Shown: one piece after another, positions 38,290-62,600 of the stretch
Layout of the letters: the number at the start of each line of letters is the position of its first letter
How positions within the stretch are numbered: position 1 is the first letter of the stretch
IMG/VR virus record: IMGVR_UViG_3300023174_000045
Span: 62,001 to 126,000 of that record
Length of the DNA: 64,000 bases
Direction: 5' to 3' (one strand)
The notes under the pieces: model-generated
Seen by the model: only the letters and a program-made list of their open reading frames with translations
Told to the model about the DNA's origin: nothing
Databases searched by the model: none
Position numbers and translations under genes: made by a program

Positions 38290-39290
38290 AAATAAACGAC
38301 ATTATCACAGAAAACTACAACGGCGAGTATGATGACGAAGCCGGCATGGTACAAGGCAACTTGTACACCATTGCCAAGGCAGCACAAGGCTTGCTGGACA
38401 CCATTGATGATCATGACAACTTGCCTGAGTGGGTGCAAGAAAAGATTGCCAAAGTAGAAGGCATGATGGTCACTGCATGGAATTACTTGCAGAGTCAAGA
38501 AGCACAGGGCATTGATCCCAAAATGTTTGAAGCTGCCAATGCCGCACAACAGGCTGCCATTGCCATCAACATGAAGAAGCATCACAAGAAGCCCAAGCAT
38601 GTAGACGAAAGTTCGGAGTTAGCAGAAGAGTTTGATCTCATTGAATCAATCATTGAACGCCTGGCCAAACACAATGGCGTTGATGCTGAAGTAATCTGGG
38701 CGGATTTAGAAACACTCACAGAAGATGAACTGTATGCTTTTGCTGTGACATCAGAGCCCATTATGGAATCACAAGACATGGCGGAAGGCTCACTAAACGA
38801 ACTCAGTAAAGATACTTTAAAATCTTATGCTAAAAAAGCAGTTCCTGATATGCAAACAAGTCAAAAAAGGTCAGAAATTGAGGCAGGAAAAGCAGCATCA
38901 ACAAAGGACGACAAAACTGCTAAAACGCATTACGATGCTGCAAAACAAGCCAGAGACAGAACAGAAAAAAGAATGGCCGGAATAAGTGGTGCTATTAAAA
39001 GAGTTACCAATCAAGGTATGGCGGAAGATTGGCAAAAGGCCAACAAGCGTGACAAAACAGATGGCATGAGCCGCAAAGCAGTCAACACCTATCGCAGAGA
39101 ACATCCTGGCAGCAAATTGCAAACTGCTGTGACCACCAAGCCCAGCAAGTTAAAGAAGGGCTCAAAGGCGTCAAAGCGTAGAAAAAGTTATTGCAGTCGC
39201 AGTCGTGGACAGATGAAAATGCACAGCATCAGTTGCGCTAAAACTCCTGACAAAGCCATATGCAAAGCACGACGTCGTTGGAACTGCTGA
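38286..39290 (+). CDS. modular putative internal virion protein
   Basis: MKINDIITE N-terminus; xxE linkers; basic C-terminal module ending ARRRWNC. Confidence 0.6.
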   Translation: MKINDIITENYNGEYDDEAGMVQGNLYTIAKAAQGLLDTIDDHDNLPEWVQEKIAKVEGMMVTAWNYLQSQEAQGIDPKMFEAANAAQQAAIAINMKKHHKKPKHVDESSELAEEFDLIESIIERLAKHNGVDAEVIWADLETLTEDELYAFAVTSEPIMESQDMAEGSLNELSKDTLKSYAKKAVPDMQTSQKRSEIEAGKAASTKDDKTAKTHYDAAKQARDRTEKRMAGISGAIKRVTNQGMAEDWQKANKRDKTDGMSRKAVNTYRREHPGSKLQTAVTTKPSKLKKGSKASKRRKSYCSRSRGQMKMHSISCAKTPDKAICKARRRWNC

Positions 39291-39550
39291 TGAGAATTGC
39301 ACTGTTATCATTGCTACTTGTTGGGTGTTCAACTGTGGTACCTGTCACACAGCGGTTTCCTGAAGCACCGGGCAACACGGCAATGACCGCTTGCCCACAA
39401 CTGCAAAAGGTTGCTGAAGATGCCCAACTCAGTGACATCTCAAAAACCATAACTGTAAACTATGGCACCTATTATGAGTGTGCTGTGAAAACAGATGCCT
39501 GGATTGAATGGTATCAAAAACAACAACAAATATTCAACAACATAAAATAA
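39290..39550 (+). CDS. lipoprotein, o-spanin (Rz1)-like candidate
   Basis: Lipobox LVGC; Pro/Cys-containing; adjacent to endolysin. Confidence 0.6.
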   Translation: MRIALLSLLLVGCSTVVPVTQRFPEAPGNTAMTACPQLQKVAEDAQLSDISKTITVNYGTYYECAVKTDAWIEWYQKQQQIFNNIK

Positions 39551-39560
39551 GGAGCCACCT

Positions 39561-40175
39561 ATGGAATTAACAATCAGTCAATTAAAACAAATGGTACCTG
39601 GCATACCCCATGCTGAGCATTGGTATGAAGCCTTGGACCAACTGTTGCCTGACTATGAAATCAACACACCCCATCGCATTGCTGCCTTCATAGCACAGTG
39701 CGCACATGAATCAGGCGGTTTTAAATTCATCAAAGAGAACTTGAACTACAAAGCAGAAAGTCTGCGCAAAATATTTGGCAAGTATTTTCCCACAGACGAA
39801 TTAGCACAGGCCTATGCCAAAAAACCTGAAATGATTGCCAACAGAATCTATGCCAACCGCATGGGCAATGGCGACGAACACTCTGGCGATGGATATCGCT
39901 ACTGTGGACGTGGACTTATCCAGTTAACTGGCCGGAGCAACTATGAAAACTTTGCTGCCAGTTTGGAAATCTCACCAGAAGAAGCTGCCGAATACTTGGC
40001 CACATTTGAAGGTGCCGCACAAAGCGCCTGCTGGTTCTGGGAAAGCAACAATCTAAATGCAGAAGCCGATGCTGGCGACATCAAGAAAATGACCAAGAAA
40101 ATCAATGGCGGTTTTATTGGATTAGAGGATCGTATCAAGCACTACGAACACGCATTACACATTATGGGAGCCTAA
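39561..40175 (+). CDS. GH19 endolysin
   Basis: RIAAFIAQCAHES, ENLNY, GRGLIQLTGR.NY, TKKINGG..GL.DR. Confidence 0.92.
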   Translation: MELTISQLKQMVPGIPHAEHWYEALDQLLPDYEINTPHRIAAFIAQCAHESGGFKFIKENLNYKAESLRKIFGKYFPTDELAQAYAKKPEMIANRIYANRMGNGDEHSGDGYRYCGRGLIQLTGRSNYENFAASLEISPEEAAEYLATFEGAAQSACWFWESNNLNAEADAGDIKKMTKKINGGFIGLEDRIKHYEHALHIMGA

Positions 40176-40176
40176 C

Positions 40177-40716: not shown

Positions 40717-40717
40717 T

Positions 40718-41470
40718 ATGGCATTACCAGGAATAAAAATTGAAGGCGGAATCAGCATTGGCGGCGGTATTTTTATGGGCACTGGCACACCGCCAACACC
40801 GCCCACTACAGGCAGTGTGTTGTTTAACTCCACACCTTCGCAATATCTTTCAGTACCTAACAATGCGGCATTTACACAAAATCAACCGTTCACTATTGAA
40901 ACATGGTTCTACCCAACCGATATCACTGGTGGTTATATTTGGGCAATGCTACAGCCTAACTTTTTGACTGTGGCCTATAGAAGCAGTGGTAAATTTCAGA
41001 TTGACATGAGTTATGTTGGTCTTCCACCAGGTTACTCTACGCTAGACACTACATACCCAATCAACAACTGGTATCACATAGCACTAACATGGGACGGCGC
41101 TATAGGATGTTTGTGGATCAACGGCGGCCAAGAGTCTCAATTTTCTGGTGCGGGCGCAACTGTAGCAGGCGGCAATCCATTCCTTATTGGACAATACCAA
41201 GGTCAAGGTCAACCAACACCCTTGGGCAACTTGTCAAACTTCCGTGTGGTCAAGGGAGTGGCAGTTTACACAGGCCCATTTACTGTGCCCACAGCACCGC
41301 TTGCAACCACACAGAGTGCAGGCACAAACATCTCGGCCATTACAGGTACACAAACTCAACTGTTGTTGAACACTATAAATGATGGAAGCTTCTTGACAGA
41401 CACTTCAGCTAACGCATTTACTGTCACAAACAATGGCAGTGTGACAAGTGCCGCACTAAATCCATTCTAA
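40718..41470 (+). CDS. ConA-like lectin/LamG domain virion protein
   Basis: FTIETWFYP, WYHIALT, LWING, G.LSNFRVVKGVAVY. Confidence 0.8.
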   Translation: MALPGIKIEGGISIGGGIFMGTGTPPTPPTTGSVLFNSTPSQYLSVPNNAAFTQNQPFTIETWFYPTDITGGYIWAMLQPNFLTVAYRSSGKFQIDMSYVGLPPGYSTLDTTYPINNWYHIALTWDGAIGCLWINGGQESQFSGAGATVAGGNPFLIGQYQGQGQPTPLGNLSNFRVVKGVAVYTGPFTVPTAPLATTQSAGTNISAITGTQTQLLLNTINDGSFLTDTSANAFTVTNNGSVTSAALNPF

Positions 41471-41544
41471 TTAACCACTGGTTAATCTAACGCCAAGATC
41501 CGTTAAATACTCTAGCCCCCAGCGTAGGGGCATGAGCAATAACA

Positions 41545-42828: not shown

Positions 42829-42912
42829 GTTATTATTTAAAGAAGTGCGGCTTAAATATTACACAGCAGTTATCTTGGCCCGAACTACATAAATATTCAA
42901 AAGGAGCCCACT

Positions 42913-50405: not shown

Positions 50406-53400
50406 ATGAATATTCATGAGTTGGACTCTTACAATCTTGGCGACGCAGTAAAGTTTCACCGCCGTCTCAATCCCAGAATCTGGGGGCGAGACGAGCATTT
50501 ACTGCCAGAAGTGCGCAACAAACTGCTGGCCATTGCCGCAGACTTTCAAGAATTCTTGGGTGTTGATAATCTCAACGTTGAAGATATCACCATATCAGGC
50601 TCCAACGCAGCCTACTCCTACACAAAAAACTCAGACATTGATCTACACCTTGTTGTAGCAATGCCCGACAATCCTGTGTATCAGGAATTGTTTAATGCTA
50701 AAAAATATCAATACAACGACGAGCACAACATAAAAATTGGCGGTGCTGATGTGGAATTGTATGTGCAACCTGCGGATCAAGCACACCACAGTCAAGGCAT
50801 TTACTCAATCAAAGATTCGGAATGGCGTCAGATACCACAACGCAAACGTGCGCAGATAGATGATTCTTGTGTGCGTGACAAAACAGCTGACTTGGATGCT
50901 AGAATACACGCCGCAATCAAAAGTCGAAATTTAGAATCCATTAGCACACTGTGGGACAAGATCAAAGCCATGCGCAAAAGCGGACTTGAACAGCACGGTG
51001 AATTTGGTTGCGAAAATATCTCTTTCAAACTGTTGCGCAACAAGGGCTGTATTGGTGCGCTAAAAGATGCAATGATGTCCGAAAAAGATCGTGAACTCAG
51101 TTTGCGTGAAGCACCTGCAACGCCATTTCGTTATGGCTATGGTTCTGAAGTTGACGAAGCCAGTTTGGCAGACATGCGAGCTGCCTTTGCCGCAGATGCC
51201 AAACCACAAAAACAAGAAGTATTTCACAGTCATGATGAATACGAAAAAGTTCGAAAACAACGCGAAGCTGAACGCGAAGAAAAAATCAAACAAATAGCAA
51301 GAAAACCAATGAAGCCGTGGTCGGGAGGCTTGGAAGAAGGCCATCAAGGTCAACCTTACAGTAGTGAAGATGGTGTTGCTGCCAGTACCAAAATGTTCTG
51401 TGAAGACAATGATGACACCCTGGTACACGACTTTATTCAACACACTGCCATGGAACTGGGCATTGATCCCATGCCCGAAATTGTGTTGCACACTGATCCT
51501 GAATGGAGCACCAACAATCACAGTTTTGGCCGCTATGACCCCGAAAGCCACACACTCAACGTCAGCATGCCCAATCGTCACATCCTGGATGTGTTGCGTA
51601 CTGTGGCACATGAACTGGTACACTGCTCACAAAATCAACAGCATGGCAACTTGCCTCCAAATGCAGGCGAAACTGGTAGTCGCTGGGAAAATGATGCCAA
51701 TGCCCGAGCTGGCATAATCATGCGTGACTGGGCCAACACACATCCTGAACACTTTGAATTGCCCCCACTGGACGAAAGTGCGTCAGGATACATTCCTAAA
51801 AATAAAAAAGAAGCAGCCATGCCACAGTATGCCATGGCCTTGAGCGTGGATATCAAGCCAGGACAGACTGGCAAAGAAGCCAACAAGCTGGCATTGCAAA
51901 CAGGCCGCAATGGCGAGCCAGGCTTGTTGATGAAAACTGTGAACTTGCGTGAGTATAAGATGCCACAGCCCAGTCAAGGTCCTGGACGATATAGAGACTT
52001 GAATGAACCACTGGGTCCAGAGACTCCGCCCGAAATGCCAGATGGCACAATCAAAGTAGATGTATCGGACATGTACGACTGGTACAAACTGGGTCAAAAG
52101 ATATCAGACTTAGGCAGTATCAAACCTGGTGAACTAGGGTCAGGTCCTCCAAGTACAGTGTTTGCATTTGGCTCAGAAGATTTAGAAAACATGTACAGTC
52201 ATGAACTCACAAAACTGGGTTTAAAAACACACGACTTGGATGAGCCTGGCGAAGAAGACATTGACGAGAGTGCAAGCGATTACCAAATACACAACACTGA
52301 GAAACTGGATCGTGTGCTGGCCAAGTGTTGTGCTATGATTGAGCGAGGGCAACAAACGGATCCTGAGCGTTACGGTATGGTTGCTGCCTGTGTGATTGAT
52401 CCTGACAATAAACAGGTGTACGGCATCAACTTACCCGGCACTGATGGCACACGCAGACATGCTGAACGTGTGGCCATCAACAAGTACCGCAAGCAGCACG
52501 GTGACATTCCTAAAGGCAGCATTGTGGTCACGACACTGAGTCCCTGCAATAGCCCCATGGATGAACGTGCAGGCGAGAGTTGCAAAGACTTACTAAACAG
52601 TGCGGGCATACACAAAGTGTATTGTGGTTACATTGACCCCACACAGCACGATGATGAGGATGCTGACTTTGTTACAGGTGTCACACAAAATGACGACTTG
52701 TGGGACAGTTGCAAAGCATTTGCCGACACATTCTTACATGAAGATGACTTAGAAGAAGGAATAAAGTCTGCATTGGCCACTGCGGCTTTGGCAGGAACAA
52801 TGGCCATGGGGGCTCAAGCAAAAGCACCAACTATGGTTCAACAAATCGTCGAGCCTGGTGATACAATTTACAGCATAGCAAGACAAACTGGTGCAGATCC
52901 CAAAGAGATATACAAACTCAACAAGATGGATCGTAATACCAAGCTAGAGATAGGACAAAAGGTTCTGGTACCCGATTATGCTAGGCCTATTAGTAAAATG
53001 CCTGCCTCTGTAACACCCACAGTCAAACAAGAACCTGTAAAAGTGGCACCTCCTGCACCAACATTAAAAGATAAAATCTCATCAATGCTACCTAAATTTC
53101 CAGATGATGACGAAGGTGTTGTATTATTGAGCGACAATCCTGACGCAGAAGCCGCGCTACAAACTGCTGCCAAAGCCGCAGGACTTAAAGGTTCTGAACT
53201 GGCACAGTTCATGGCACAGACCCGACACGAAAGTGCAAACTTTGCACACATGAAAGAAATTGGCACTAAGAAAAAATTTGATCATTATGAAAAAAATCGT
53301 ACTCTAGCAAGACGATTAGGCAATACAGTCAAAGGTGATGGAGAAAGATTTAAAGGCCGTGGGTTCATTCAGTTGACCGGACGTGACAACTATACCAGAG

Positions 53401-53630
53401 CCAGCCAACAAATCTTTGGCGATGACCGACTGGTAAGAAATCCTGACTTGGCCAGCAAGTTGGATGTGGCAGCAAAAGTTGCACTGTGGTATTGGAAAAA
53501 TCAAGTTAGGCCCAAAGTCAATGATTTTAACAATACCACACAAGTTGTCAAAGCAATCAATGCTGACGAACCAATGAATGTTGTAAAACAACGTCACAAC
53601 AAATTCAAAGAATATTTGGCGGTGTTATGA
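50406..53630 (+). CDS. five-enzyme mosaic protein: nucleotidyltransferase, zincin, deaminase, LysM, GH19
   Basis: GSNA...SDIDLH; AHELVH..E; HAE...TLSPC...C; VEPGDTIYSIA...L.IGQKVLVP; FMAQT.HES...GRGFIQLTGRDNY. Confidence 0.85.
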   Translation: MNIHELDSYNLGDAVKFHRRLNPRIWGRDEHLLPEVRNKLLAIAADFQEFLGVDNLNVEDITISGSNAAYSYTKNSDIDLHLVVAMPDNPVYQELFNAKKYQYNDEHNIKIGGADVELYVQPADQAHHSQGIYSIKDSEWRQIPQRKRAQIDDSCVRDKTADLDARIHAAIKSRNLESISTLWDKIKAMRKSGLEQHGEFGCENISFKLLRNKGCIGALKDAMMSEKDRELSLREAPATPFRYGYGSEVDEASLADMRAAFAADAKPQKQEVFHSHDEYEKVRKQREAEREEKIKQIARKPMKPWSGGLEEGHQGQPYSSEDGVAASTKMFCEDNDDTLVHDFIQHTAMELGIDPMPEIVLHTDPEWSTNNHSFGRYDPESHTLNVSMPNRHILDVLRTVAHELVHCSQNQQHGNLPPNAGETGSRWENDANARAGIIMRDWANTHPEHFELPPLDESASGYIPKNKKEAAMPQYAMALSVDIKPGQTGKEANKLALQTGRNGEPGLLMKTVNLREYKMPQPSQGPGRYRDLNEPLGPETPPEMPDGTIKVDVSDMYDWYKLGQKISDLGSIKPGELGSGPPSTVFAFGSEDLENMYSHELTKLGLKTHDLDEPGEEDIDESASDYQIHNTEKLDRVLAKCCAMIERGQQTDPERYGMVAACVIDPDNKQVYGINLPGTDGTRRHAERVAINKYRKQHGDIPKGSIVVTTLSPCNSPMDERAGESCKDLLNSAGIHKVYCGYIDPTQHDDEDADFVTGVTQNDDLWDSCKAFADTFLHEDDLEEGIKSALATAALAGTMAMGAQAKAPTMVQQIVEPGDTIYSIARQTGADPKEIYKLNKMDRNTKLEIGQKVLVPDYARPISKMPASVTPTVKQEPVKVAPPAPTLKDKISSMLPKFPDDDEGVVLLSDNPDAEAALQTAAKAAGLKGSELAQFMAQTRHESANFAHMKEIGTKKKFDHYEKNRTLARRLGNTVKGDGERFKGRGFIQLTGRDNYTRASQQIFGDDRLVRNPDLASKLDVAAKVALWYWKNQVRPKVNDFNNTTQVVKAINADEPMNVVKQRHNKFKEYLAVL

Positions 53631-54934
53631 GAGCACATGAATTTCTATACAAAAAACCTCTTGATGAAGATGTTGAGAATTTTCCCATTGCCAACGTGCG
53701 CAGACCCAACGGTGCCATTGGTAACCAAGGTGTCAACACCGAACAAGCAGCAGATGTGTTGACTCATGCTGCCGGCATGCAGGTATCGCCAGACATGACC
53801 ATGCGTCAAATGGTGGATGCACTACGAGCAGATCCTGCGGCACAACAACGACTGAGACAATTTGTACAACAAAACCCTGTGACAGTGTATGCACTGCCAG
53901 ATGGTTCATATCATTTGCAAGATGGACATCACAGAACATTTTTGCTGAACTTGCTGGGTGATGAAACAGTGCCAGCCATAGTCAAAGAAGATGTCAAGGA
54001 AGCCAACACTGTGGAGTTTGAAGGGTTGACTTTGAAAGTAATCAAAAGCGGACATGAGTTAGTAGTTGATGCCCTTGATGACTGGGGTAACAAGGTACTA
54101 GGACATGTACGATTCAACATAGGCGACAACAAAGAATTGGATCCGCAAGATCTCTCTGTGGATGAGAAATATCAAGGCCAAGGTATTGCCCGTGTCATGT
54201 ATGATTATATCAAAAGCCAGGGCTATACCATTGTTAGAAGTTGGGATCAAACTGATGCAGGCGCAGGCTTTTGGAACAAGCATCGCGGAGAAGATGTTCG
54301 AGTTTGGGAAACCTTTGACAACCCTTACAAGGGCACGTGGGAAAAAAGCGATTATGGTGACGTTGATCTAAACACAAAATTACCAGACGGCACATATCTC
54401 AACATCATGTTCAATCAAGAATATGACGGAGAAGGCGACGAAGTCGTTCAAGTTGAATTCCACAGAAACAACAGCCAAGAAGTCACGGGCGAGGGCGATG
54501 CACAGCGTATCTTTGCCACAGTGTTGGATGCTATACAAAAATACATTAAAAAATACAAACCCGAAAGACTAAGTTTCTCAGCAAGCAAATCAGTGGACAT
54601 GGACGCAGACGATGTTGAACACTTCAATCCAGAAAGCCGTGCCAAGTTATACACCAGACTGGTACAACGATATGCTGGCACCTGGGGTTATCAGGCTCAG
54701 GTCAGCGACGAAGGCGATGTGGTTATATATCAACTGACTAGAACCATAGCAGAAAACTTTGCAGACGGTAAAAATCCCGGCCGCAAAGGACTCAGTAAGC
54801 GCATGGGTGTGAACACCAAGGCCAGTGTTAGTAGTTTGCGCAACACAGCCAAACATTCATCAGGTGAGAAACAACGCATGGCCCACTGGCTGGCCAACAT
54901 GAAAGCTGGTAGAGCAAAGGCACGAAGAAAATGA
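53627..54934 (+). CDS. mosaic protein: ParB-like, GNAT, unknown domain, basic C-terminal module
   Basis: LQDGHHR; VDEKYQGQGIA..MY..QT.AG..FW. Confidence 0.75.
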   Translation: MRAHEFLYKKPLDEDVENFPIANVRRPNGAIGNQGVNTEQAADVLTHAAGMQVSPDMTMRQMVDALRADPAAQQRLRQFVQQNPVTVYALPDGSYHLQDGHHRTFLLNLLGDETVPAIVKEDVKEANTVEFEGLTLKVIKSGHELVVDALDDWGNKVLGHVRFNIGDNKELDPQDLSVDEKYQGQGIARVMYDYIKSQGYTIVRSWDQTDAGAGFWNKHRGEDVRVWETFDNPYKGTWEKSDYGDVDLNTKLPDGTYLNIMFNQEYDGEGDEVVQVEFHRNNSQEVTGEGDAQRIFATVLDAIQKYIKKYKPERLSFSASKSVDMDADDVEHFNPESRAKLYTRLVQRYAGTWGYQAQVSDEGDVVIYQLTRTIAENFADGKNPGRKGLSKRMGVNTKASVSSLRNTAKHSSGEKQRMAHWLANMKAGRAKARRK

Positions 54935-56094
54935 AAATACGACAAATTGTAGAAGCCGCTGAACGTGGCAAAACACTGGGCGGATTCCCCATCAAAGTAT
55001 TGCATGTGGAACACGGTGCCACAGACGAAGCACTCAAACTGGATGCACCACAACAGTCTTGGAGCAACCAAGACATGCAAGACTACTTGAGTCGTGTTAA
55101 AACTGGTACCAAGACCAAAGCCGACAAGTTCCGACCCATCATACACGGCAGCAATGTCAAAGCCATTACCAAAGATGACGGTGGTACAGAATGGGATTTG
55201 GATGATTTAAAAAGTCAGATCATGCAGCCGCCAAGACAGATCTTGGGTACCAATGCCAAAATGGCCAAGAGCAAACAAGAAGGCGCCATCACATATGACC
55301 TAACACTGCCGGCATTGAGTGGCATTGTGGTGGATGAAGACACAGGCGAATTTGTGGAAGTGATAACCTGCCCTGGTGCTGGCGAGTGCCAAACCTACTG
55401 CTATGCTAGAAAAGGTGGTTATGTGATGTTCCCAGCCAGTTCAATGAGTGCGGCACAGGCCTTGAACTTCTTGGTCAACCACCCTTCGGACTACATGGAG
55501 AAGTTTGACGGCGAAGTCAAAAAAGCCGCTGCATTAGCCAGCAAAAACGGCATCAAGTTGTTGGTGCGCATACATGATGCTGGCGACTTCTTCTCCAAAG
55601 AATACTACAATCTCATGATGGATGTGGCCAAGAACAATCCAGATGTAAAGTTCTATTTCTACACCAAGATGGGACAAATAGTAACAGACCCTGACACACC
55701 CGACAACGTGGTCAAACAGTTCTCACCTGGCGCCAAGAGTCGTGAAGTCAAAACAGTTCAACTGCAACGTGATGCTGGCAAACATGTCAAAGACGCGGTG
55801 ACATTGCCCAAGGACATGTTCCGTGATTTGTTTGTGACAGATGCCAAGGGCAAGTATGTCAAGGACGAAAAGGGACGTACACAGGTTCGCAGTCCCCAGG
55901 CGTGGCAACAGTTCCGTCAAGAACTGGGCGCAAAATACAACATTGACCCCGACACTGTGATCACATACGATGAAATGAACCGCATACCCGAAGGCCCTGC
56001 ACCCAAATGGAACGTTGTAGTGTTTCCTGCAGGGCATGGAGACCTAGGCGCCAGCAGACTGGACGTGGCAAACCAATTCTTGATGTTCCACTAA
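54931..56094 (+). CDS. GP88-like Cys-cluster protein
   Basis: N.KM, LPA, TCPGAGECQTYCYA.KG, RIHDAGDF, YFYTK. Confidence 0.7.
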   Translation: MKIRQIVEAAERGKTLGGFPIKVLHVEHGATDEALKLDAPQQSWSNQDMQDYLSRVKTGTKTKADKFRPIIHGSNVKAITKDDGGTEWDLDDLKSQIMQPPRQILGTNAKMAKSKQEGAITYDLTLPALSGIVVDEDTGEFVEVITCPGAGECQTYCYARKGGYVMFPASSMSAAQALNFLVNHPSDYMEKFDGEVKKAAALASKNGIKLLVRIHDAGDFFSKEYYNLMMDVAKNNPDVKFYFYTKMGQIVTDPDTPDNVVKQFSPGAKSREVKTVQLQRDAGKHVKDAVTLPKDMFRDLFVTDAKGKYVKDEKGRTQVRSPQAWQQFRQELGAKYNIDPDTVITYDEMNRIPEGPAPKWNVVVFPAGHGDLGASRLDVANQFLMFH

Positions 56095-56104: not shown

Positions 56105-57229
56105 ATGAATTTATACGACCTGTTCAACGAAGAAAAAGTGCGCCTTGACCCCAAGTGCTGGAAGGGCAAAAAGATTGGCAATCCCAAGACCAAGATGAAG
56201 GGCGGCGTGCGTGTAAACAACTGTGTGCCTGCTGAGAGCATAGCAGAAAATGCCGGGCAACCACTCACAGTTCAACAATTGGCCGCCATCAGTGATGAGG
56301 CCTTGGATCAAGCATATGGGTATGGACGTAGTACACCCAGCAACAACTTTGGCTGGCAAGCCAATTTGAAGTCAGCTGCCTATGCCAAGCAAATGATTGA
56401 TCAGGGTGTGACAGACATTGAAGCCATCAGTGATGCTATTCACAAAGGATGGAACACTACTGCACAGGCATTTGTACAAGATCCTGAACAGTTTGATGAC
56501 ACAGCAAAACTGGCAGCAGCCGGCAAACTAGAAGCCAAACTTCAACAGCGAGCACAGTTGATGAAACAAAATTATGCTCAGTTACCTGAAGAAGAAAAAG
56601 AAAAAGACCGTGTGGTTGCACGAGCACTGTTACAGGCCATTCGTGGATCACAACAACCAGATGTGGCAGAAGGCGTGATGTACGGTGCAGAAAACTTGCA
56701 CGTAGGCGACGATGTGATCATTAGTGGCGATGTCAATCTCAAAGGTGCCACTGGCGTGATTGACAGCTTTGGCCAAGACAAACGTTTTGTTGTTGTCAAC
56801 CTGTACAATCATGGCAAGCACAGTTTCCACTCTAGTGATGTCAGCATCAACGACCATGATAATGATGAACACGATGACGATGTACTGGATGAAAAGTCTG
56901 TGAGCCAAGCACAGTTCCGTACCATGGCAGCGGCTGCACACAATCCCAAGTTTGCCAAGAAAGTTGGCATCAGTCAAGATGTTGCCAAAGAGTTTCACTC
57001 AGCAGACAAGCACAGCAATTACAAAAAGTTACCAGATCGTACCACTGAAGGCGAGCAACAAAAGGGTGCAGACTATCGTGACCCTAAGGAAGTTGACTAC
57101 GATGACGAATACGATGCCATGGTTGCCAGAGTTAAAAAGTTAGCCGGACTGGGCCCTATGCGAACTGTGTACGATCCCGCCAAGCGACAATATCGCAACA
57201 TGCCCACAGCAGTGCAGCCTAAAAAATGA
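56105..57229 (+). CDS. mosaic protein with RyR-like and KOW-like modules
   Basis: CWKG...NCVP module; AIHKGW...YAQLPEEEKEKDR; VGDDVIISG..KGATGVI. Confidence 0.65.
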   Translation: MNLYDLFNEEKVRLDPKCWKGKKIGNPKTKMKGGVRVNNCVPAESIAENAGQPLTVQQLAAISDEALDQAYGYGRSTPSNNFGWQANLKSAAYAKQMIDQGVTDIEAISDAIHKGWNTTAQAFVQDPEQFDDTAKLAAAGKLEAKLQQRAQLMKQNYAQLPEEEKEKDRVVARALLQAIRGSQQPDVAEGVMYGAENLHVGDDVIISGDVNLKGATGVIDSFGQDKRFVVVNLYNHGKHSFHSSDVSINDHDNDEHDDDVLDEKSVSQAQFRTMAAAAHNPKFAKKVGISQDVAKEFHSADKHSNYKKLPDRTTEGEQQKGADYRDPKEVDYDDEYDAMVARVKKLAGLGPMRTVYDPAKRQYRNMPTAVQPKK

Positions 57230-57723
57230 GAGCCCAAGAGTTTGTTGCTGAAGGCAAACAACCTGGAAAGCCAGTGGTTGATGCCATACAGAAAGTATTA
57301 CCCATGGCACAAGAAATATGGTTTCATGGTAGTCGTGCCACAGGTCGGCATCGTAGAAATAGCGACACTGACATCTTGGTGGTTGTGCCTGACAACCTTG
57401 TGGGTGATCAGTATCTTGCGGTGGTAAGAATACTACAAAAACTTGCTTCTCACTTTGACAACTATGACATACAGCCTACCAAGTCAGGCACTAACATACA
57501 TCGTATAGCACAAGAAGAAGGTCGATTGTTATGGTCCAGCAAGCTAGGTGTGGCAGAAGAACAACTAGACGAACTCAGTTTCCTAGGATCAGAATGCACC
57601 AAAGACTGTTCAGGACATCGCGCTGGATATGAGTGGTCAAAACGCAAGGGCCTGCGTCAAGCCAACAGCCTGTACAGTCCCAGTTTCAACAAAGGTGCCG
57701 CCTTGGCAGTGGCCGGCAAATAG
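57226..57723 (+). CDS. minimal nucleotidyltransferase (MNT-like) with a Cys module
   Basis: IWFHGSRATG...SDTDILVV...DI; CTKDCSGHRAGY.W. Confidence 0.75.
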   Translation: MRAQEFVAEGKQPGKPVVDAIQKVLPMAQEIWFHGSRATGRHRRNSDTDILVVVPDNLVGDQYLAVVRILQKLASHFDNYDIQPTKSGTNIHRIAQEEGRLLWSSKLGVAEEQLDELSFLGSECTKDCSGHRAGYEWSKRKGLRQANSLYSPSFNKGAALAVAGK

Positions 57724-57764
57724 TCCCCAAAAAGTTATCCACGTAGATTTCGCTAAATACTTCT

Positions 57765-58275: not shown

Positions 58276-58681
58276 ATATGCTTTCAGTATCAAGGCTCAG
58301 TTATTTCACTGGAACGTGGAAGGCCCTGATTTCGCTCAACTGCATGAGTTTTTTGGCAACCTGTATGAAGAGGTCTACGACGGTTCGATAGACAAAACCG
58401 CAGAATACATACGTGCCATGGGCGACTACGCACCTGGCAGCTTTGAACGTTTTGCTGAACTCAGCATCATTCAAGGACAAACAAAAATCCCACGAGCCAG
58501 ACTCATGATCGAAGAACTGCTGGCCAACAATGGTCAGCTGTTGGAACTACTCAACGAGAATTTCGCCATTGCCGAACAAGAAAATCAACAAGGCATTGCT
58601 AACTTTATTGCAGAACGCATTGATGCACATCAGAAACATGCATGGATGCTGAGAAGTTTCCTGAAAGACAATAGAGCATGA
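58238..58681 (+). CDS. dps: Dps/ferritin-like protein
   Basis: HWNVEGPDF.QLHEFF..LYE...D..AE.IR...H.KHAWML. Confidence 0.93.
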   Translation: MLADSLKTLLATEYAFSIKAQLFHWNVEGPDFAQLHEFFGNLYEEVYDGSIDKTAEYIRAMGDYAPGSFERFAELSIIQGQTKIPRARLMIEELLANNGQLLELLNENFAIAEQENQQGIANFIAERIDAHQKHAWMLRSFLKDNRA

Positions 58682-59610
58682 GCAACGACATTAGATCAAT
58701 ATTAGACCGACTGGCCACAGTGGAAGGTAAGTTGAGTCCAGCGCAACAAAAAGTACCACAACTGCCTGCGCTGTTCAAACCACGACACATTCGTGCCTTG
58801 GATTCAAAAACAGATCCTGCTCATCCCATGGACGGATACATGGTGGGTGATTCAATAGAGCCTAAAAAAACTGCGCTTGAAGAAGCCATGGCAGAAATTG
58901 AAGAAGACATGTTGAGCAAGGTCAAGAAAGACCTAACAACATATTTGGATCGACTGGAAAAGAAGGTACGTGTTGACCGTGACTTAAAAGACAAAGCTCA
59001 GGACGCTGTACAAAAAGGCAAGGCCGAAGAAGAGATTGAAGAGTTTGCACCACCAGGTGGTGATGACCGCGAACCCGACGAAGAAGAAATTCTACGACGC
59101 CTGGCTGCACAGTGGTGGAATGGAACGGAACAACAAATGGCCAAGGCACAAAACACATTGTCTGCAATGGGCTGGGAAATTGGTCAAGACGAAAGTGGTG
59201 ATGACGATGCTGGGGTATTCCTTGTACGTGCCGGCGATGTCAACGGTGATAGTTACATGGCGTTCAATCACAGTGACTTAGATTTAAACGAAGAAATTGA
59301 CACTGATCCTGCTGCCATTCACGGACCGTCAGATCCTGGAGACACTGAAGTAGCACACGCCGCTGAACTAGATGTAGACAACACACTCAGCGCACCACAA
59401 GCACCTGTGGCCACATTTGAAATGGCCGACGGTGCGGCACTGGAATGCTGGGGCGATGACAATTCGGGCTATGAAATTCGACATGGAGAACGTGCATTGC
59501 CCAGTCGCTTTAAGAGCCTGGATGACGCTGGCATGGCAGTGAAGTTGTATCAAGCTCGACAGCGAGCACAGCAACGCAACTCAGATGCAGATTACATAGA
59601 AGAACGATAA
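58678..59610 (+). CDS. acidic modular protein (putative internal head/scaffold-like)
   Basis: Many xxE linkers; ends DYIEER, resembling the DYVEERRS end of the 48372 protein. Confidence 0.6.
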   Translation: MSNDIRSILDRLATVEGKLSPAQQKVPQLPALFKPRHIRALDSKTDPAHPMDGYMVGDSIEPKKTALEEAMAEIEEDMLSKVKKDLTTYLDRLEKKVRVDRDLKDKAQDAVQKGKAEEEIEEFAPPGGDDREPDEEEILRRLAAQWWNGTEQQMAKAQNTLSAMGWEIGQDESGDDDAGVFLVRAGDVNGDSYMAFNHSDLDLNEEIDTDPAAIHGPSDPGDTEVAHAAELDVDNTLSAPQAPVATFEMADGAALECWGDDNSGYEIRHGERALPSRFKSLDDAGMAVKLYQARQRAQQRNSDADYIEER

Positions 59611-59612
59611 TC

Positions 59613-62600
59613 ATGATCACAAGCGATTTATTCACCAACAACTCATCTGCCTTGTTTGAAAACACAGGCCCAGTCACACACCGCGTTGGTCTCACAGTGA
59701 CTGACCCCAACCACCCCATGGTTTCAAAGCGTGGCGAAACTATTCAAAAGACTGTGCGTGTCAAAGGTGACGACCGTGAAAAAGCCATCAACGGTGCCAT
59801 TGCACACCTTCGCCGCAAAGGTTACAAAGTACATGACCATCACTATATTGGCACAGTGGATCAAGGTGTGTCAGAAGGTCAGTTGGAATTAAACACACCA
59901 GATCCTGTTGTAGTGGTACAAGATCAACAAGGTAAAATTCTAGATAAAATAAATTTATCAGTGGCTGCACAAAAATACAAATTGGGTCAACCACAAAACA
60001 TAAAGAATCAGTTGGCGCATCAAAATTATACCAAAATTGGTAGTTACACCATAGTATCTCCCATGAGCGGGCAGCCACAAGATCAAACAACCACTGGACA
60101 GAAAACTACGTTTGCCACGCCTGGCGTGGTGGAAGATATGCCACATGGTCAAGACATAAATGATCCGTTAGACCCTAGCTACGGTGGTAACCGCAATCGT
60201 TCAGTCAAGCAGAATATCCAAGCCCGTTTAGGTCACGATGAACGTGGTGATGCAAGAGAGCGAGCTGGTCAACCACGCAGTACTCATGCACGACACAAAC
60301 CACAACTGCCAGAAAGTTCAATGGATGACGATGCTATTTGGCGTCAATATGGACAGTATAACGCACAAGACTTGATGCAGGAATTTCCAAATCTAAATCC
60401 CAAGGATGCACAGACCATAGTAAATTACGCCGAGTATGGTTGGTCATCTTCCAATCCACAAAAATTTAGAAATGAAGTGGTACAGCGAGTTAAAATGGCC
60501 ATGGGTCAACAAGGTGTGAACGAAGTCAGCCTAGGTGACTATCGTAAAAAAGCACAACTAAGTCAAGCAGGTGCCAAGATAAACAAGTTCTTTGACCGTG
60601 ACGATCCTGCAGCGGTTGCCGCTGCTGATCAAACCATTGCCAAGCGAGAAAAGGGCCTGGCACGTGCTGATGCTAGAATCAAGCCATACACACCTCCTGC
60701 ACAAGATGCTGAAAAACACCAACGTGATTTAACCGCCAAGTATCCCAACATTGACGAATTAGTGGCCGCAGCCGAACAGCGCCGTGACCCCAATTACGAC
60801 TACGCCGAAGGTGATGCTTATTATCGTGGCCGCGAAGCTGAACAAAACTATCAAAAATTAAAACAAATCCAACGTGTGATTCAAGGCTTAAATGAATCTT
60901 GTGCCGCAGTAAAAAAAAATTATCTGTATGAAGGCCTAGACCGTGACAGCGTGAACACAGTCAAGCTGTGGGAAAGTGCTGGCCAACGCATTGTGGAAGC
61001 CCAACTCACAGTTGATCAAATCAATCAATTGTTCAAATCCGCAGAACAAGACGCTACTGCTGCTGGTGGCAACAGAACCATGGTTGGCAAGGGCAAAGAC
61101 GCTGCTGTAGCAGTCAACCGAGCCTGGGAAGATTTAAAGACCAAGGTACAAAATTCTGGTCCTATCAAGAGTGTGGATGCTGCCTATGATTCGGCAGCAG
61201 AAAAATTAAAACAAGCCACTGGTGGTGACCAGGGCGTGATGAAGTACGTGCAAAAGTATCGTGACTTTGCCAAGGCACATCCTGTGGCACAGAGTTTGAT
61301 TTACTCGGCCTTGATTGCTGCCGCAGGTATTTCAGGAGCTGGTGTAGGTGGGGCCGCTGCCTTAGGTCTGTTCAAACTTGTGGACAAACTGTTGCAAGGT
61401 GAAAAGTTCTCCAGTGCCGCCTACTCAGGTGCTAAGACTGGCGCAATGGCCTATGGGGCCAGCAAGGTTGCTGACTACTTTAGAGGACCACAAACACCGC
61501 AAGGTGGCGGTGGTCTTGATCCCAAGGATCCTGATGTTGCAGCATTCCGACGAGATGTAGCCGACATGCGTGGGTACGATAATTACATGACTAAAAATCC
61601 CACATCATCGTTGAGTCCAGAACAGTATGCGGCAAAAATAGGCAAAGCTTCTGCATTGACACCAGATGGTTCTGGATTGACATCGCAGGCCAGCATGATG
61701 AATAATATTGCCAGCAAAATGGGATTGCCACCCGGTGCTCACCAAGCAACATTCCAAGGCGGTGTACCAGTGACCATAGATGGCAAAGCTGTACCATTGA
61801 ATTTGTTGTCAGGAGATCAGCAAAGAAATATCGAAGCCGCTCGTGCTATGCGACAGGCTATGTCCGGATCACAGTCTCTTGCTCAGAAAGCGGCCGCTGC
61901 TGCCGCCGCAGCGGACAAAACTTATGAATCACTCAATGTTCATACCAGTCACAAATTAACTGATGCAGACTTGTATTTCATATTCAGTGCCGCCACACAA
62001 CTCAACGAAGGCATCTGGGACAGCATCAAAGGCACTGCCGGCAAGGCTGCTGGCAAGGCTGCTGACTGGGCCAAAACACAGGGTACCAATCTCACCACCA
62101 AAGTCACTGCTGACAAATTAAAGAGTGCATGGCTCAAGGCTGGTTCACCCACAGACAGTGACCAAGTTTACAATGTGATGACTCAGGCCGGGGTGGCACC
62201 ACAAATATTAGACACTGTGTACAAGACCATGGGCGTCCCCACGTTCAAAGAAAAAGCCCTAGCAAGACCAACAACACCTGCTTTTTCAAGCGCACCAATA
62301 CCTGCTGGACCAGCATCTAAATCAGCAGCAGCCGCTGGGTCAGCACCAGCGACTACAACGCCAGCAAGTCCTGAAGTCACGCCTAACGCCGCTACACCAG
62401 CAACAGCCGATGCCCCCAAGACAAAACAGTTGGGCACTGGTACTGGTCGTATCAATCCTGCCACTGGACGACCCTGGACTCCTAGCGAGCTCAAAGCCAA
62501 GTATGCGCAACCACAGTCAACAGCGCCCACACCAGACTCAGAGCCACCTGCACCAGAACTTACTTCGCCAGAGCCTGCTTTAAAATCTAGCCCAACCGCA

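What the first reader, a model, noticed from the sequence alone, without database searches (positions are those of the whole stretch)
38772..60524. Recurrent QG(V/M)AE linker conserved at DNA level: possible module-shuffling joint
Seen: near-identical 15-18 nt junctions CAAGACATGGCGGAAGG (38772), CAAGGTATGGCGGAAGA (39012), CCAGATGTGGCAGAAGG (56657), CTAGGTGTGGCAGAAGA (57544), CAAGGTGTGTCAGAAGG (59862) and CAAGGTGTGAACGAAG (60510), in four different genes. The module between 38772 and 39012 is visibly more A-rich than its flanks. Inference: the linker is both a protease site and a microhomology for in-frame insertion or excision of cassettes, giving recombinase-free, integron-like payload variation.
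Basis: partly seen in the sequence, partly recalled or inferred. Interest (0 to 1): 0.72.

Follow-up and report, generated by a model that had tools for sequence, protein, structure and literature searches.

The report
Codon-frozen linker joining swappable phage protein cassettes
In a lake jumbo phage, several likely capsid-packaged proteins are built from swappable modules joined by one short linker (Q-G-V/M-A-E). The linker looks like a T4-type head-protease cut site, and its DNA spelling is conserved far beyond what the amino acids require, so it also marks where modules are exchanged between genes and phages.

Summary
All six strings sit at the stated coordinates, in frame 0 of four + strand genes. 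They are decayed copies (3-4 mismatches) of an 18-nt consensus, CAAGGTGTGGCGGAAGGC (QGVAEG), which recurs in at least 120 IMG/VR phage contig stretches.

The window is part of a 225-kb fragment of a roughly 345-kb lake jumbo phage. Complete relatives encode a T4 gp21-type prohead protease.

The motif genes start with leaders like the T4 capsid targeting sequence (MRAQEFVAE|G versus T4 MKTYQEFIAE). Every module start in relatives follows hydrophobic-x-Glu, the gp21 specificity.

- **Breakpoints.** The 225-nt cassette at 38787-39011 is 93-99% identical at the protein level in four other contigs, in three unrelated contexts. DNA homology starts and stops inside the linkers. About 50 relatives have the site empty.
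- **Codons.** The linker Ala codon is the rare GCG in 70-83% of independent linkers, against a 5-12% background. The same V/I-A-E peptide in N-terminal leaders uses ordinary codons.

Best reading: these are internal-head polyproteins whose protease-site linkers double as short in-frame recombination joints. Cleavage and the recombination enzymology are inferred, not shown. No integrase was found, so "integron-like" is only an analogy.

The parts
38286..39290 (+). Gene A (334 aa from ATG 38286; the ORF opens at 38229). It is a modular protein with these parts, in order: leader MKINDIITE; a module also found in cyanophages (aa ~4-71); an 'AQQAAIAINMKK..KPK' module; the 'EEFDLIESI..FAVTSEPIME' core; linker; cassette; linker; and the DUF6321 anchor.
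   Evidence: ORF; Pfam DUF6321 at 274-351 of the long ORF, 32.1 bits against a 28.5 cutoff; 79 related loci with mosaic architectures.
38286..38312 (+). CTS-like N-terminal leader of gene A, MKINDIITE|N (I-T-E = L/I-x-E).
   Evidence: The T4 CTS MKTYQEFIAE and gp21 specificity L/I-X-E come from PMC9026906 and bioRxiv 10.1101/2021.01.19.427310.
38772..38789 (+). Linker copy 1, CAAGACATGGCGGAAGGC (QDMAE|G), the 5' boundary of the cassette.
   Evidence: DNA homology to L189-L192 begins inside it, at ..TGGCGGAAGGC.
38787..39011 (+). Mobile 75-aa cassette (GSLNELSKDTLKSY...AIKRVTN). It is A-rich and Lys/Ala-rich, and has no known family.
   Evidence: 93-99% aa identity, with few nucleotide differences, in L189, L190, L191 and L192, where it sits in three unrelated contexts. 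It is absent from about 50 gene A relatives, whose empty site reads ..ATTATGGAAGATTGGCAA. Lake-metagenome contigs skip it, and depth drops inside it. Composition.
39012..39029 (+). Linker copy 2, CAAGGTATGGCGGAAGAT (QGMAE|D), the 3' boundary of the cassette.
   Evidence: Homology to L189-L192 stops right after ..GGCGGAAG.
39027..39290 (+). DUF6321 C-terminal 'anchor' module (DWQKANKRDK...RRWNC). It is basic and contains Cys residues.
   Evidence: Pfam. In 42 different contexts it is always preceded by [LVIM]-x-E|. It also forms the C-terminal part of ORFs annotated as hypothetical proteins in T4-like cyanophages.
53627..54934 (+). Its parts are: leader MRAHEFLYK; a ParB-like nuclease; a GNAT module; a module shared with gene C relatives; RTIAE|N (54740-54757); and the 'NFADGKNPGRKGLSKR...' anchor.
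   Evidence: Pfam and PHROG hits. Modules shared with L099 and L081. Coordinates.
56105..57229 (+). Gene B (374 aa). Its parts, in order: leader MNLYDLFNE|E; the 'KCWKGKKIGNPKTK..NNCVP' module; ESIAE|N (56234-56251); module 51-184; PDVAE|G; cassette 190-262; a module at about 263-314; RTTE|G (57038-57052); and the 'DYDDEYDAMVARVKK..' anchor.
   Evidence: Relatives match residues 7-43, 43/46-183/189 and 315/325-374 separately. The module at 263-334 resembles the N-terminus of phage 121Q gp51, annotated 'virion structural protein'.
56657..56674 (+). Linker copy 3, CCAGATGTGGCAGAAGGC (PDVAE|G).
   Evidence: At the orthologous position relatives have QGVAED, PGMAEG or QGVAED, each followed by a different module.
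57226..57723 (+). Gene C (165 aa). Its parts are: CTS-like leader MRAQEFVAE|G (57226-57255); a Pol-beta nucleotidyltransferase cargo; LGVAE|E; and the 'QLDELSFLGSECTKDCSGHRAGYEW..' anchor.
   Evidence: Pfam Polbeta/NTP_transf_2 at 28-105. Relatives keep the leader and anchor but carry other cargo (GNAT, PG-binding, deaminase) or none.
57544..57561 (+). Linker copy 4, CTAGGTGTGGCAGAAGAA (LGVAE|E), between the NTase domain and the anchor.
   Evidence: Relatives match 4-105 (L010, L011) or 111-165 (L093-L095) separately.
59613..63056 (+). Gene D (1147 aa). It has a degenerate leader MITSDLFTN, a widely shared N-terminal module (aa ~17-83), two linker copies, and a long C-terminal part with no family hit.
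59862..59879 (+). Linker copy 5, CAAGGTGTGTCAGAAGGT (QGVSE|G).
   Evidence: Relatives of the upstream module end at residues 84-88. L153 has the canonical CAAGGTGTGGCGGAAGGC at this position.
60510..60527 (+). Linker copy 6, CAAGGTGTGAACGAAGTC (QGVNE|V).
   Evidence: The L152 match starts at residue 295 and reads QDVSE|V at the same place, with an unrelated upstream part.
50406..53630 (+). Neighbouring 1074-aa multidomain protein in the same gene block. It contains an NTase-like N-terminus, a zincin-type HELVH motif, a cytidine deaminase, LysM and a GH19 lysozyme.
   Evidence: Pfam and PHROG hits. The HExxH motif is visible in the sequence.
54931..56094 (+). GP88-family protein (387 aa) with the leader-like start MKIRQIVE|A.
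   Evidence: Pfam GP88, E 1.3e-30; sequence.
58678..59610 (+). 310-aa protein that shares a module (FAPPGGDDREPDEEEIL...DLDLNE|E) with the mosaic relative L076. It contains EAMAE|I at 58882-58899.

Best explanation
Genes A-E of the window encode internal-head (ejected) polyproteins of a T4-related jumbo phage.

Proposed protein-level mechanism (inferred):
- A roughly 9-aa N-terminal leader of the T4 capsid-targeting type brings each protein into the prohead core.
- A gp21-type (Peptidase S77) prohead protease cuts after Glu in hydrophobic-x-Glu. It cuts at the leader and at every Q-G-V/M-A-E linker.
- This frees small cargo modules and basic Cys-containing 'anchor' modules inside the capsid, to be delivered with the DNA.

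DNA-level role:
- The linker is also a nucleotide-conserved 15-18 bp island (consensus CAAGGTGTGGCGGAAGGC) placed in frame between unrelated modules.
- Recombination or template switching between non-allelic linker copies, within a genome or between co-infecting relatives, inserts, deletes or swaps whole cassettes.
- The reading frame is never broken, and every cassette arrives with its own cleavage site.
- Linkers that keep the canonical spelling keep taking part in exchanges and so appear in ever new contexts. Copies that mutate, like the six in this window, decay in place.

What is shown and what is inferred:
- Shown: the linkers exist, they are module boundaries, cassettes move with breakpoints inside them, and the codons are conserved beyond protein need.
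- Inferred: capsid packaging, cleavage by the prohead protease, and which enzymes perform the exchange.
For: Module boundaries:
- Homology of relatives to genes A, B, C and D breaks at the six sites.
- Nucleotide-level breakpoints lie at the motif edges: 21 of 23 on the 3' side and 9 of 9 on the 5' side.
- HSP ends are about 4-fold enriched within 3 aa of the strict motif.

Cassette mobility:
- The cassette 38787-39011 is 93-99% identical at the protein level in L189-L192, in three other contexts, and homology stops at the linkers.
- L001 and L002 carry a different cassette at the same site. That cassette is a module of the L189/L190 polyprotein.
- The empty site occurs in about 50 loci.
- Lake-metagenome contigs skip the cassette, and one places it in another context.

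Codon freezing:
- GCG 49/66, GTG 40/51, GGT 52/66 and the 12-mer GGTGTGGCGGAA 31/66 across flank-dissimilar clusters. Background is GCG 9%, GTG 28%, GGT 42%.
- Under the strictest clustering, GCG is 18/23, p = 3e-15.
- Replication on 138 bystander linkers gives GCG 83% and the 12-mer 62%, against about 1% expected.
- The exact 18-mer occurs in at least 120 IMG/VR stretches, against 42 for the GCA variant, and at near-chance level in 596 Gbp of prokaryote genomes.
- Controls: orthologous, amino-acid-invariant DUF6321 columns show a major-codon share of about 0.65 and GCG of 0-10%. Non-linker x-x-A-E sites show GCG 5-12%. Leaders ending in V/I-A-E show GCG 1/12 and never use GTG.

Protease and packaging:
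- T4 gp21 cuts after L/I-X-E, and the T4 CTS is MKTYQEFIAE.
- The leaders here read MRAQEFVAE, MKINDIITE and MNLYDLFNE.
- 43% of linker ORFs have such a leader, against 13% of other ORFs.
- Every start of the DUF6321, KCW, EEFD, NAGQ and GEQQ modules follows x-x-E.
- The ClpA-like protein places G000 in one clade with complete 340-347 kb genomes (70-91% identity). Those genomes carry Peptidase_S77 with E about 1e-25.
- One gene B module resembles the N-terminus of a protein annotated as a virion structural protein in phage 121Q.
Against: - No proteomic or biochemical evidence exists that these proteins are packaged or cut.
- The 225-kb contig is 65% complete and holds no Peptidase_S77 or Gp23 hit itself.
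- The window's own six copies are degenerate and none carries the full canonical core. In this genome the linkers may no longer be active joints.
- Only 15-26% of BLAST HSP ends lie within 3-6 aa of the strict motif. Many boundaries use looser x-x-E sites.
- The first insertion into the empty gene A site cannot have used a pre-existing linker there. Only about 5+5 nt of microhomology is visible.
- The Gly-codon/Val-Met covariation, which I first took as a sign of identity by descent, is partly ordinary codon-pair bias.
- Codon freezing could have an RNA-level or translation-level cause that I could not test.
- The metagenome evidence comes from contigs at 85% or more likeness, so it reflects related phages rather than one clonal population.
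Confidence: 0.6

Rival explanations
1. The constraint is at protein level only. The linker is just a protease site or structural hinge. Cassettes are joined by random illegitimate recombination, and selection keeps only products whose modules are flanked by sites. Under this view the DNA identity plays no part in the exchange.
For: All module starts follow x-x-E, even where no canonical linker is present. Many boundaries use degenerate sites. The empty gene A site had no linker before insertion.
Against: This view does not explain why unrelated contexts share the rare GCG plus GTG and GGT. It also does not explain why the same V/I-A-E peptide in leaders uses ordinary codons, or why homology tracts end exactly at the 15-18 nt core.
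Confidence: 0.15
2. The codon freezing reflects an RNA-level or translation-level function of the linker, such as a programmed pause between domains, an internal ribosome contact (the linker contains AAGGTG), or an RNA processing site. Under this view recombination at the linker is a by-product.
For: The conserved third positions extend over six codons. The motif is strictly in frame and sense: 153 of 154, and. There is a real background codon-pair bias in the same direction for Gly-Val and Gly-Met.
Against: The flanks are unrelated, so no conserved RNA structure can include them. Context controls do not produce GCG. No start codon is suitably spaced after the SD-like AAGGTG. Cassette borders still map to the core.
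Confidence: 0.1
3. A dedicated sequence-specific enzyme, such as a homing-type endonuclease or an unrecognised recombinase, recognises the 18-mer and drives cassette movement.
For: The degree of nucleotide conservation is more typical of a recognition site than of simple microhomology. T4-like genomes of the clade carry HNH-type endonuclease genes: one ORF with the motif HHIVPRSLGG..NL..LT..EH lies beside the major capsid protein (MCP) gene of G003.
Against: No tyrosine integrase was found in the contig. No gene consistently accompanies the linker genes in the loci I read. The motif was found outside the sense coding frame only once on the contig (antisense, in a looser pattern), so there is no sign that it exists as a free DNA site.
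Confidence: 0.1
4. The finding is chance resemblance or an assembly artefact, that is, chimeric metagenome contigs joined at a short repeat.
Against: There are 4 hits against 0.04 expected for a consensus derived from other contigs. The same junctions recur in contigs from different samples. Reading frames stay open across junctions. As general knowledge, 15-18 nt is shorter than usual assembler k-mers.
Confidence: 0.02

Closest known systems
T4 internal proteins (IPI, IPII, IPIII, Alt) with the capsid targeting sequence, processed by the gp21 prohead protease
   Same: A short N-terminal leader ends in hydrophobic-x-Glu (T4 MKTYQEFIAE; here MRAQEFVAE, and MRAREFIAE in relatives). Cleavage after Glu at L/I-X-E is the known gp21 rule. 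The cargo is hypervariable between related phages while only the targeting part is conserved (PMC9026906, PMC3012670). Clade relatives have a Peptidase_S77 gene.
   Different: As described in those reviews, T4 IPs are single-cargo proteins cut once, next to the leader. Here several cargo modules are strung together with repeated internal sites, and the internal sites, but not the leaders, are nucleotide-frozen. There is no sequence homology to T4 IPs beyond the leader pattern.
Polyvalent proteins of phages and conjugative elements (Iyer, Burroughs, Anand, de Souza, Aravind 2017, PMC5512222)
   Same: Many unrelated effector domains sit in one polypeptide, are predicted to be delivered with the DNA, and need processing into units. 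The domains seen here (ParB-like nuclease, GNAT, deaminase, NTase, lysozyme, zincin peptidase) are typical of that class.
   Different: That paper proposes processing by a built-in zincin (MPTase) domain. A search of its text found the word 'linker' nowhere and no description of a conserved linker or nucleotide-level joint. Here most cassettes have no Pfam family, and the inferred processing is by the prohead protease at a repeated site.
PeSL cassettes of T4-type phages (Arbiol et al. 2010, PMC2839356; Comeau et al. 2014, PMC4122927)
   Same: Short conserved sequences are repeated between variable units in T4-type genomes, and recombination between them inserts, deletes and replaces the units.
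   Different: PeSLs are intergenic promoter-plus-terminator elements that shuffle whole genes. Here the repeat is an in-frame coding linker that shuffles protein domains inside genes.
Glycine-rich motifs (GRMs) of T-even gp38 adhesins (Trojet et al. 2011, PMC3157838; Tetart et al. 1998, as cited there)
   Same: Conserved intragenic motifs separate variable segments, and chimeras arise by exchange between the conserved motifs.
   Different: GRMs are part of one folded domain of one gene family, and the segments swapped are alleles of the same loop. Here the linker joins unrelated domains, occurs in many gene families, and is probably removed by proteolysis.
Integron gene cassettes
   Same: A platform accumulates interchangeable payload cassettes bounded by a repeated site.
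   Different: Integrons need an IntI tyrosine recombinase, attI and attC. No integrase was found. The repeat here is translated, and cassettes are protein domains rather than genes. The resemblance is an analogy only.

Membership tests
T4-type CTS-targeted, gp21-processed internal head proteins | N-terminal ~10-aa capsid targeting sequence ending in L/I-x-E | tested here: met
   Gene C MRAQEFVAE|G, gene A MKINDIITE|N and gene B MNLYDLFNE|E, compared with T4 MKTYQEFIAE. 43% of linker ORFs have such a start, against 13% of other ORFs. Genes D and E have degenerate leaders. This is pattern similarity only.
T4-type CTS-targeted, gp21-processed internal head proteins | A gp21-type (Peptidase S77) prohead protease in the same genome | tested here: inconclusive
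   There is no hit in the 225-kb contig, which is 65% complete. Hits with E about 1e-25 occur in 7 of 10 related records, including all four that are 95-100% complete. The ClpA-like protein ties G000 to them at 70-91% identity.
T4-type CTS-targeted, gp21-processed internal head proteins | Protein is physically in the capsid and is cut after Glu at the site | not testable with these tools
   This needs virion mass spectrometry or in vitro cleavage. The only indirect hint is that one gene B module resembles the N-terminus of a protein annotated as a virion structural protein in phage 121Q.
Polyvalent proteins (Iyer et al. 2017) | Two to fifteen unrelated effector-type domains in one phage polypeptide | tested here: met
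   50406-53630 has NTase-like, HExxH, deaminase, LysM and GH19 parts. 53627-54934 has ParB-like nuclease and GNAT parts. Genes A, B and D are multi-module by homology breakpoints, but most of their modules have no Pfam family.
Polyvalent proteins (Iyer et al. 2017) | Processing by an MPTase (zincin) domain within the protein | tested here: not met
   Genes A, B, C and D have no peptidase domain. Only the 1074-aa neighbour (HELVH motif) and some relatives (L010, Peptidase_M48-like) have one.
Integron | IntI-type tyrosine recombinase with attI/attC sites | tested here: not met
   PF00589 gives no hit in the contig. The repeats are translated linkers, not attC hairpins.
PeSL regulatory cassettes | Intergenic sigma70-like promoter plus stem-loop terminator | tested here: not met
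   All copies lie inside ORFs in the sense frame.
Pfam DUF6321 | Match to PF19846 above the gathering score | tested here: met
   Gene A residues 274-351 score 32.1 bits against a cutoff of 28.5. The same domain occurs in L010 and L012 and in cyanophage ORFs.

The most novel reading that the evidence does not exclude
A large population of lake (and some other aquatic) phages shares a domain-level cassette system. A translated, codon-frozen 18-nt linker serves both as the protease cut site that releases each packaged effector and as a portable in-frame recombination site. Through it, hundreds of unrelated small effector modules are continually re-dealt among polyprotein genes and among phages. 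This would be a coding-sequence counterpart of integrons and PeSLs, and possibly a dedicated, still unrecognised enzyme maintains it.
Probability: 0.4. Interest if true: 0.85.

Novelty: new variant of a known kind. Interest (0 to 1): 0.77.

Why it matters
How phages reshuffle protein domains without destroying reading frames is usually explained by rare illegitimate recombination followed by selection. This case offers a concrete and abundant alternative: one short linker, conserved letter for letter, at which unrelated domains are exchanged in frame, with each domain arriving ready to be released by the capsid protease.

If the mechanism is confirmed, four things follow:
- It would explain the fast turnover of injected anti-host effectors.
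- It would provide a sequence tag (leader plus linker) for finding packaged effector modules in metagenomes. Most of those found here have no known family.
- It would make the old 'linker' hypothesis of modular phage evolution directly testable, by recoding the linker.
- It would suggest a natural design for loading several cargo proteins into T4-type capsids.

Tried and rejected
- **Near-identity DNA search.** Searching 38000-62900 against cultured phages found nothing. The nearest cultured relatives of the ClpA-like gene are only about 40% identical.
- **Paralogy.** All-against-all blastp within the contig showed no paralogy among the four motif genes, so the motif is not part of a repeated domain.
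- **Head genes in the contig.** Pfam Peptidase_S77 and Gp23 searches of the contig itself were negative. The contig is a fragment.
- **Literature.** Nothing was found for DUF6321. 'QGVAE' returns only alpha-synuclein papers.
- **Gly-codon covariation.** GGT before GTG versus GGC before ATG looked like two linker lineages. The same direction of bias exists at non-linker Gly-Val and Gly-Met pairs, so I do not use it as evidence.
- **HSP-endpoint test.** Using the strict motif gave only a moderate signal, 15% against 4% within 3 aa. BLAST ends are fuzzy, and many boundaries carry degenerate x-x-E sites.
- **AlphaFold2 of gene B.** A 9-row mosaic alignment gave mean pLDDT 38.9, too poor to say anything about domain limits.
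- **Pfam on nine multi-linker relatives.** Almost no families were found.
- **Single-linker scar allele.** I looked for a product of recombination between the two gene A linkers. None was seen among loci or contigs. The skipping contigs correspond to the IME|DWQ and IMESEAWQ empty alleles.
- **Complex prediction.** I did not run a protease-linker complex prediction. A pass would have added little, and a failure would have added nothing.

Full report
**1. The observation**

The six strings are at exactly the stated coordinates, once each. All begin on a codon boundary of + strand ORFs:
- Gene A (38229/38286-39290): QDMAE|G and QGMAE|D.
- Gene B (56105-57229): PDVAE|G.
- Gene C (57226-57723): LGVAE|E.
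- Gene D (59613-63056): QGVSE|G and QGVNE|V.

The window is bases 62001-126000 of a single 225,080-bp IMG/VR viral contig. The contig is linear and CheckV rates it about 65% complete. Its GC content is 44.8%.

Across the whole contig the loose peptide pattern occurs 7 times in 70.5k aa, and 6 of those are in these four genes. On the DNA level it occurs only in the sense frame of ORFs. The four genes are not paralogues by blastp, so this is an isolated short motif and not part of a repeated domain.

**2. Relatives show what the motif is**

Scans of IMG/VR with genes A, B and D returned many loci whose matches cover only pieces of the query. The pieces end at the motif:
- Gene B relatives match residues 7-43, 43/46-183/189 and 315/325-374. 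PDVAE is 185-189.
- Gene D relatives match 17/22-84..88 and 295-430. The motifs are at 84-88 and 300-304.
- Gene C relatives match 4-105 or 111-165. LGVAE is 107-111.

Reading the ORFs shows long mosaics in which unrelated segments are separated by QGVAE, QGMAE, EGVAE, KGVAE and similar linkers, usually followed by Gly. For each of the six window sites, relatives that share one flank continue into something different on the other side, and the switch is at the motif or at a decayed version of it.

At nucleotide resolution I examined pairs with one homologous and one unrelated flank. In 21 of 23 pairs the 3'-side breakpoint lies at +14..+20 of the motif. In 9 of 9 pairs the 5'-side breakpoint lies at -1..+5.

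A cruder test on BLAST HSP ends gives 15% within 3 aa of the strict motif against 3.9% at random. The remainder mostly sit at looser x-x-E sites.

**3. A cassette caught moving**

The 75-aa segment between the two gene A motifs (38787-39011) is found at 93-99% amino-acid identity in four other contigs. It sits there in three unrelated contexts:
- In a 690-aa polyprotein (L190; L189 holds the same gene cut at the contig end). L190 lies on the same contig as a cassette-free gene A homologue (L025), but in a different gene.
- In L191.
- In L192.

In the DNA alignment (A1) the cassette differs at only a few positions among the five copies. Homology begins inside the 5' linker (..TGGCGGAAGGC) and stops right after the 3' linker (CAAGGTGTGGCGGAAG). 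Outside the linkers the sequences are unrelated.

About 50 gene A relatives have the site empty, reading ..ATTATGGAAGATTGGCAA (IME|DWQKAN) or IMESEAWQKAN. L001 and L002 carry a different cassette at the same place, and that cassette is itself another module of the L189/L190 polyprotein.

Contigs of four lake or freshwater metagenome runs laid on 37800-39400 show the same polymorphism:
- Joints skip the cassette: 38769 to 39022 in three runs, and 38768 or 38775 to 39030.
- In run X1, summed depth falls from 532 just upstream to 30-173 (per 54-nt bin) inside the cassette.
- A loose end places the cassette behind a different upstream sequence.

These are contigs at 85% or more likeness, so they represent related phages and not one clonal population.

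**4. The DNA spelling is frozen**

I collected every x-G-[VMI]-A-E in ORFs of 100 aa or more in the first 180 loci and the contig. I then clustered them so that copies in different clusters have dissimilar flanks on both sides. Results for the 66 clusters:

| Codon or word | Linkers | Background |
|---|---|---|
| Ala GCG | 49/66 | 9% |
| Val GTG | 40/51 | 28% |
| Gly GGT | 52/66 | 42% |
| 12-mer GGTGTGGCGGAA | 31/66 | about 0.9% expected |

Further points:
- The strictest single-linkage clustering leaves 23 clusters, with GCG in 18 (p = 3e-15). Conservation extends over CAAGGTGTGGCGGAAGGC.
The otherwise identical GCA variant occurs in 42, although GCA is four times the commoner codon.
- In 596 Gbp of prokaryote genomes there are 56 matches. 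Most are single hits in high-GC genomes, which is near the chance expectation for an 18-mer.
- 153 of 154 seed matches are in the QGVAEG frame of ORFs of 100 aa or more (median 564 aa).
- The other linkers in those same ORFs were not selected by the pattern. These 138 linkers, unique by flank, show GCG 83%, GTG 86%, GGT 91% and the 12-mer 62%.

Controls:
- In the truly orthologous and amino-acid-invariant columns of the DUF6321 module, the major-codon share averages about 0.65. Each Ala column prefers a different codon, and GCG is 0-10%.
- Ala in non-linker x-x-A-E is GCG in 5-12% of cases, whatever the neighbouring bases.
- N-terminal leaders that end in the same V/I-A-E peptide use GCT or GCC, with GCG 1 of 12, and never use GTG. 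Gene C itself spells its leader TTTGTTGCTGAAGGC.

So the amino acids, codon bias and local context do not explain the spelling, and the putative cleavage function does not need it. The six window copies are decayed versions, at 3-4 mismatches each. Four of them are still found by the foreign consensus at 3 or fewer mismatches, against 0.04 expected.

**5. What the proteins are**

Leaders:
- The motif genes begin with M-[KR]-x-x-[DE]-[ILF]-[ILFV]-x-E leaders: MRAQEFVAE|G (gene C), MKINDIITE|N (gene A) and MNLYDLFNE|E (gene B).
- Relatives read MRAREFIAE, MRASEFIKE and MIIDELFE.
- The T4 capsid targeting sequence of internal proteins is MKTYQEFIAE. It is removed by the gp21 prohead protease, which cuts after Glu in L/I-X-E (PMC9026906 and bioRxiv 10.1101/2021.01.19.427310).
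- T-even internal proteins are described as a highly diverse set with only the targeting sequence conserved (PMC3012670).
- 43% of linker-bearing ORFs start this way, against 13% of other ORFs in the same loci.

Module starts:
- Every start of five well-defined modules in relatives is preceded by hydrophobic-x-E.
- This includes all 42 contexts of the DUF6321 module: QLNE|D, PVNE|D, PIME|D and GVAE|D.

Protease:
- The contig fragment has no Peptidase_S77 or Gp23 hit.
- Its ClpA-like protein is 91, 76, 72 and 70% identical to those of records G006, G008, G003 and G001. It is about 40% identical to the nearest cultured phages.
- All four 95-100% complete relatives (340-353 kb) have a Peptidase_S77 gene with E about 1e-25. 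In the one I read, G003, it lies in a T4-like head block.
- Seven of the ten related records searched have it.

Gene architecture:
- The general architecture is leader, then cargo cassettes, then a conserved small basic or Cys-containing C-terminal 'anchor'. The anchors are DUF6321 in gene A, DYDDEYDAMVARVKK.. in gene B, FLGSECTKDCSGHRAGY.. in gene C and NFADGKNPGRKG.. in gene E.
- Gene C relatives keep the leader and anchor and carry a GNAT, a peptidoglycan-binding module, a deaminase or nothing where the window has a nucleotidyltransferase.
It combines a ParB-like nuclease, a GNAT and a module shared with gene C relatives, followed by RTIAE|N and the anchor.
- The neighbouring 1074-aa protein has a zincin motif, a deaminase, LysM and a GH19 lysozyme. 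It fits the 'polyvalent protein' class of Iyer et al. 2017. A search of that paper's text found the word 'linker' nowhere and no description of a conserved linker (PMC5512222).

Hints of a virion location:
- One gene B module resembles the N-terminus of phage 121Q gp51, annotated as a virion structural protein.
- In cyanophage S-CREM2 the DUF6321 protein is encoded between the two terminase genes.

**6. How it most likely works**

Inferred for the protein:
- The leader takes the polyprotein into the prohead core.
- The gp21-type protease cuts at the leader and at each linker.
- The freed modules travel with the DNA into the next host.

Shown for the DNA:
- The linkers are where cassettes are gained, lost and replaced.
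- They carry 15-18 identical bases in otherwise unrelated surroundings.

Inferred for the DNA:
- Exchange happens by general recombination or template switching on this short identity. Complete relatives have a RecA/UvsX-type gene, and no tyrosine integrase is present in the contig.
- The canonical spelling persists because only copies that still match can take part in new exchanges.

The first insertion into an empty site must have been less regular. The empty gene A site shares only about 5+5 nt with the linker.

Rivals:
- Protein-only constraint with random joining, which does not explain the codons.
- An RNA-level or translation-level role for the spelling, which is not excluded.
- A dedicated enzyme that recognises the 18-mer, for which no candidate was seen.
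- Chance or assembly artefact, which is excluded.

**7. Comparison and novelty**

The separate ingredients are known:
- CTS-led internal proteins cut by gp21.
- Polyvalent proteins.
- Modular shuffling at short conserved repeats in T4-type phages. Examples are intergenic PeSLs (PMC2839356, PMC4122927) and the glycine-rich motifs of gp38 (PMC3157838).

What I did not find described is the combination. That is a translated protease-site linker, frozen at the nucleotide level, reused in many unrelated gene contexts, and delimiting mobile domain cassettes inside polyproteins.

It is not an integron, because the defining recombinase and att sites are absent. I rate it a new variant of a known kind.

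In this particular window the copies are decayed. The clearest live evidence is the recently moved gene A cassette.

Noticed in passing
window 50406-53630: A 1074-aa protein combines an NTase-like N-terminus (phrog_36119), a zincin HELVH motif, a cytidine deaminase, LysM and a GH19 lysozyme. It looks like a textbook 'polyvalent protein'. Its GH19 part is paralogous to the small lysozyme gene at 39561-40175.
   Followed up: partly
window 58238-58681: A ferritin/Dps-like gene (Pfam Ferritin, E 5e-23) sits in the middle of the modular gene block. It has no leader and no linker.
   Followed up: no
window 44450-46702: A ClpA/ClpB-like double AAA+ ATPase (phrog_4871, E 4e-237). It is about 40% identical to those of PA5oct, Atu_ph07 and Rak2-like jumbo phages, and 70-91% identical to uncultured lake relatives. 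It is useful as a clade marker.
   Followed up: partly
L010/L011 4546-4851 (255-aa ORF): The nucleotidyltransferase cargo of window gene C occurs here in another gene. It is flanked on both sides by the direct repeat ENFADGKKPG, which is the start of a different anchor module. This suggests a second kind of repeat-bounded insertion.
   Followed up: no
L006 270-914: This gene A relative has a tandem duplication of 'ELSDDELYVFAVTSELINEDWQKAN', so the junction region is repeated once in frame.
   Followed up: no
window 56105-56233 and many loci (L091-L151): The 'RLDPKCWKGKKIGNPKTKMKGGVRVNNCVP' module of gene B is 86-97% identical in dozens of contigs, in many positions within proteins. It may be one of the most widespread small modules of this system. 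Its function is unknown.
   Followed up: partly
window 40718-41470 and L187 10249-11743 (G003): A 250-aa protein has a C-terminal stretch nearly identical to that of two paralogous ORFs just downstream of the capsid gene block and an HNH-type ORF in the complete relative G003 (..VVKGVAVYTG.FTVPTAPLATTQSAGTNISAITGTQTQLLLNT..).
   Followed up: no
all linker loci: The Gly codon before Val is GGT and before Met is GGC, both in linkers and, more weakly, at ordinary Gly-Val and Gly-Met pairs. This is a codon-pair bias of these phages.
   Followed up: yes
L397 (8,950-bp contig binned in a lake Bacteroidetes MAG), also L379, L405, L362: Small contigs in metagenome-assembled bacterial genomes carry one to three exact copies of the 18-mer. 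They are probably phage contigs mis-binned into MAGs, and could hint at hosts.
   Followed up: no
contig G000 129161-129883 (outside the window, window coordinate 67260): A further in-frame copy, GTGGGCGTGGCAGAAGAT (VGVAE|D), lies in a 240-aa ORF downstream of the window.
   Followed up: no
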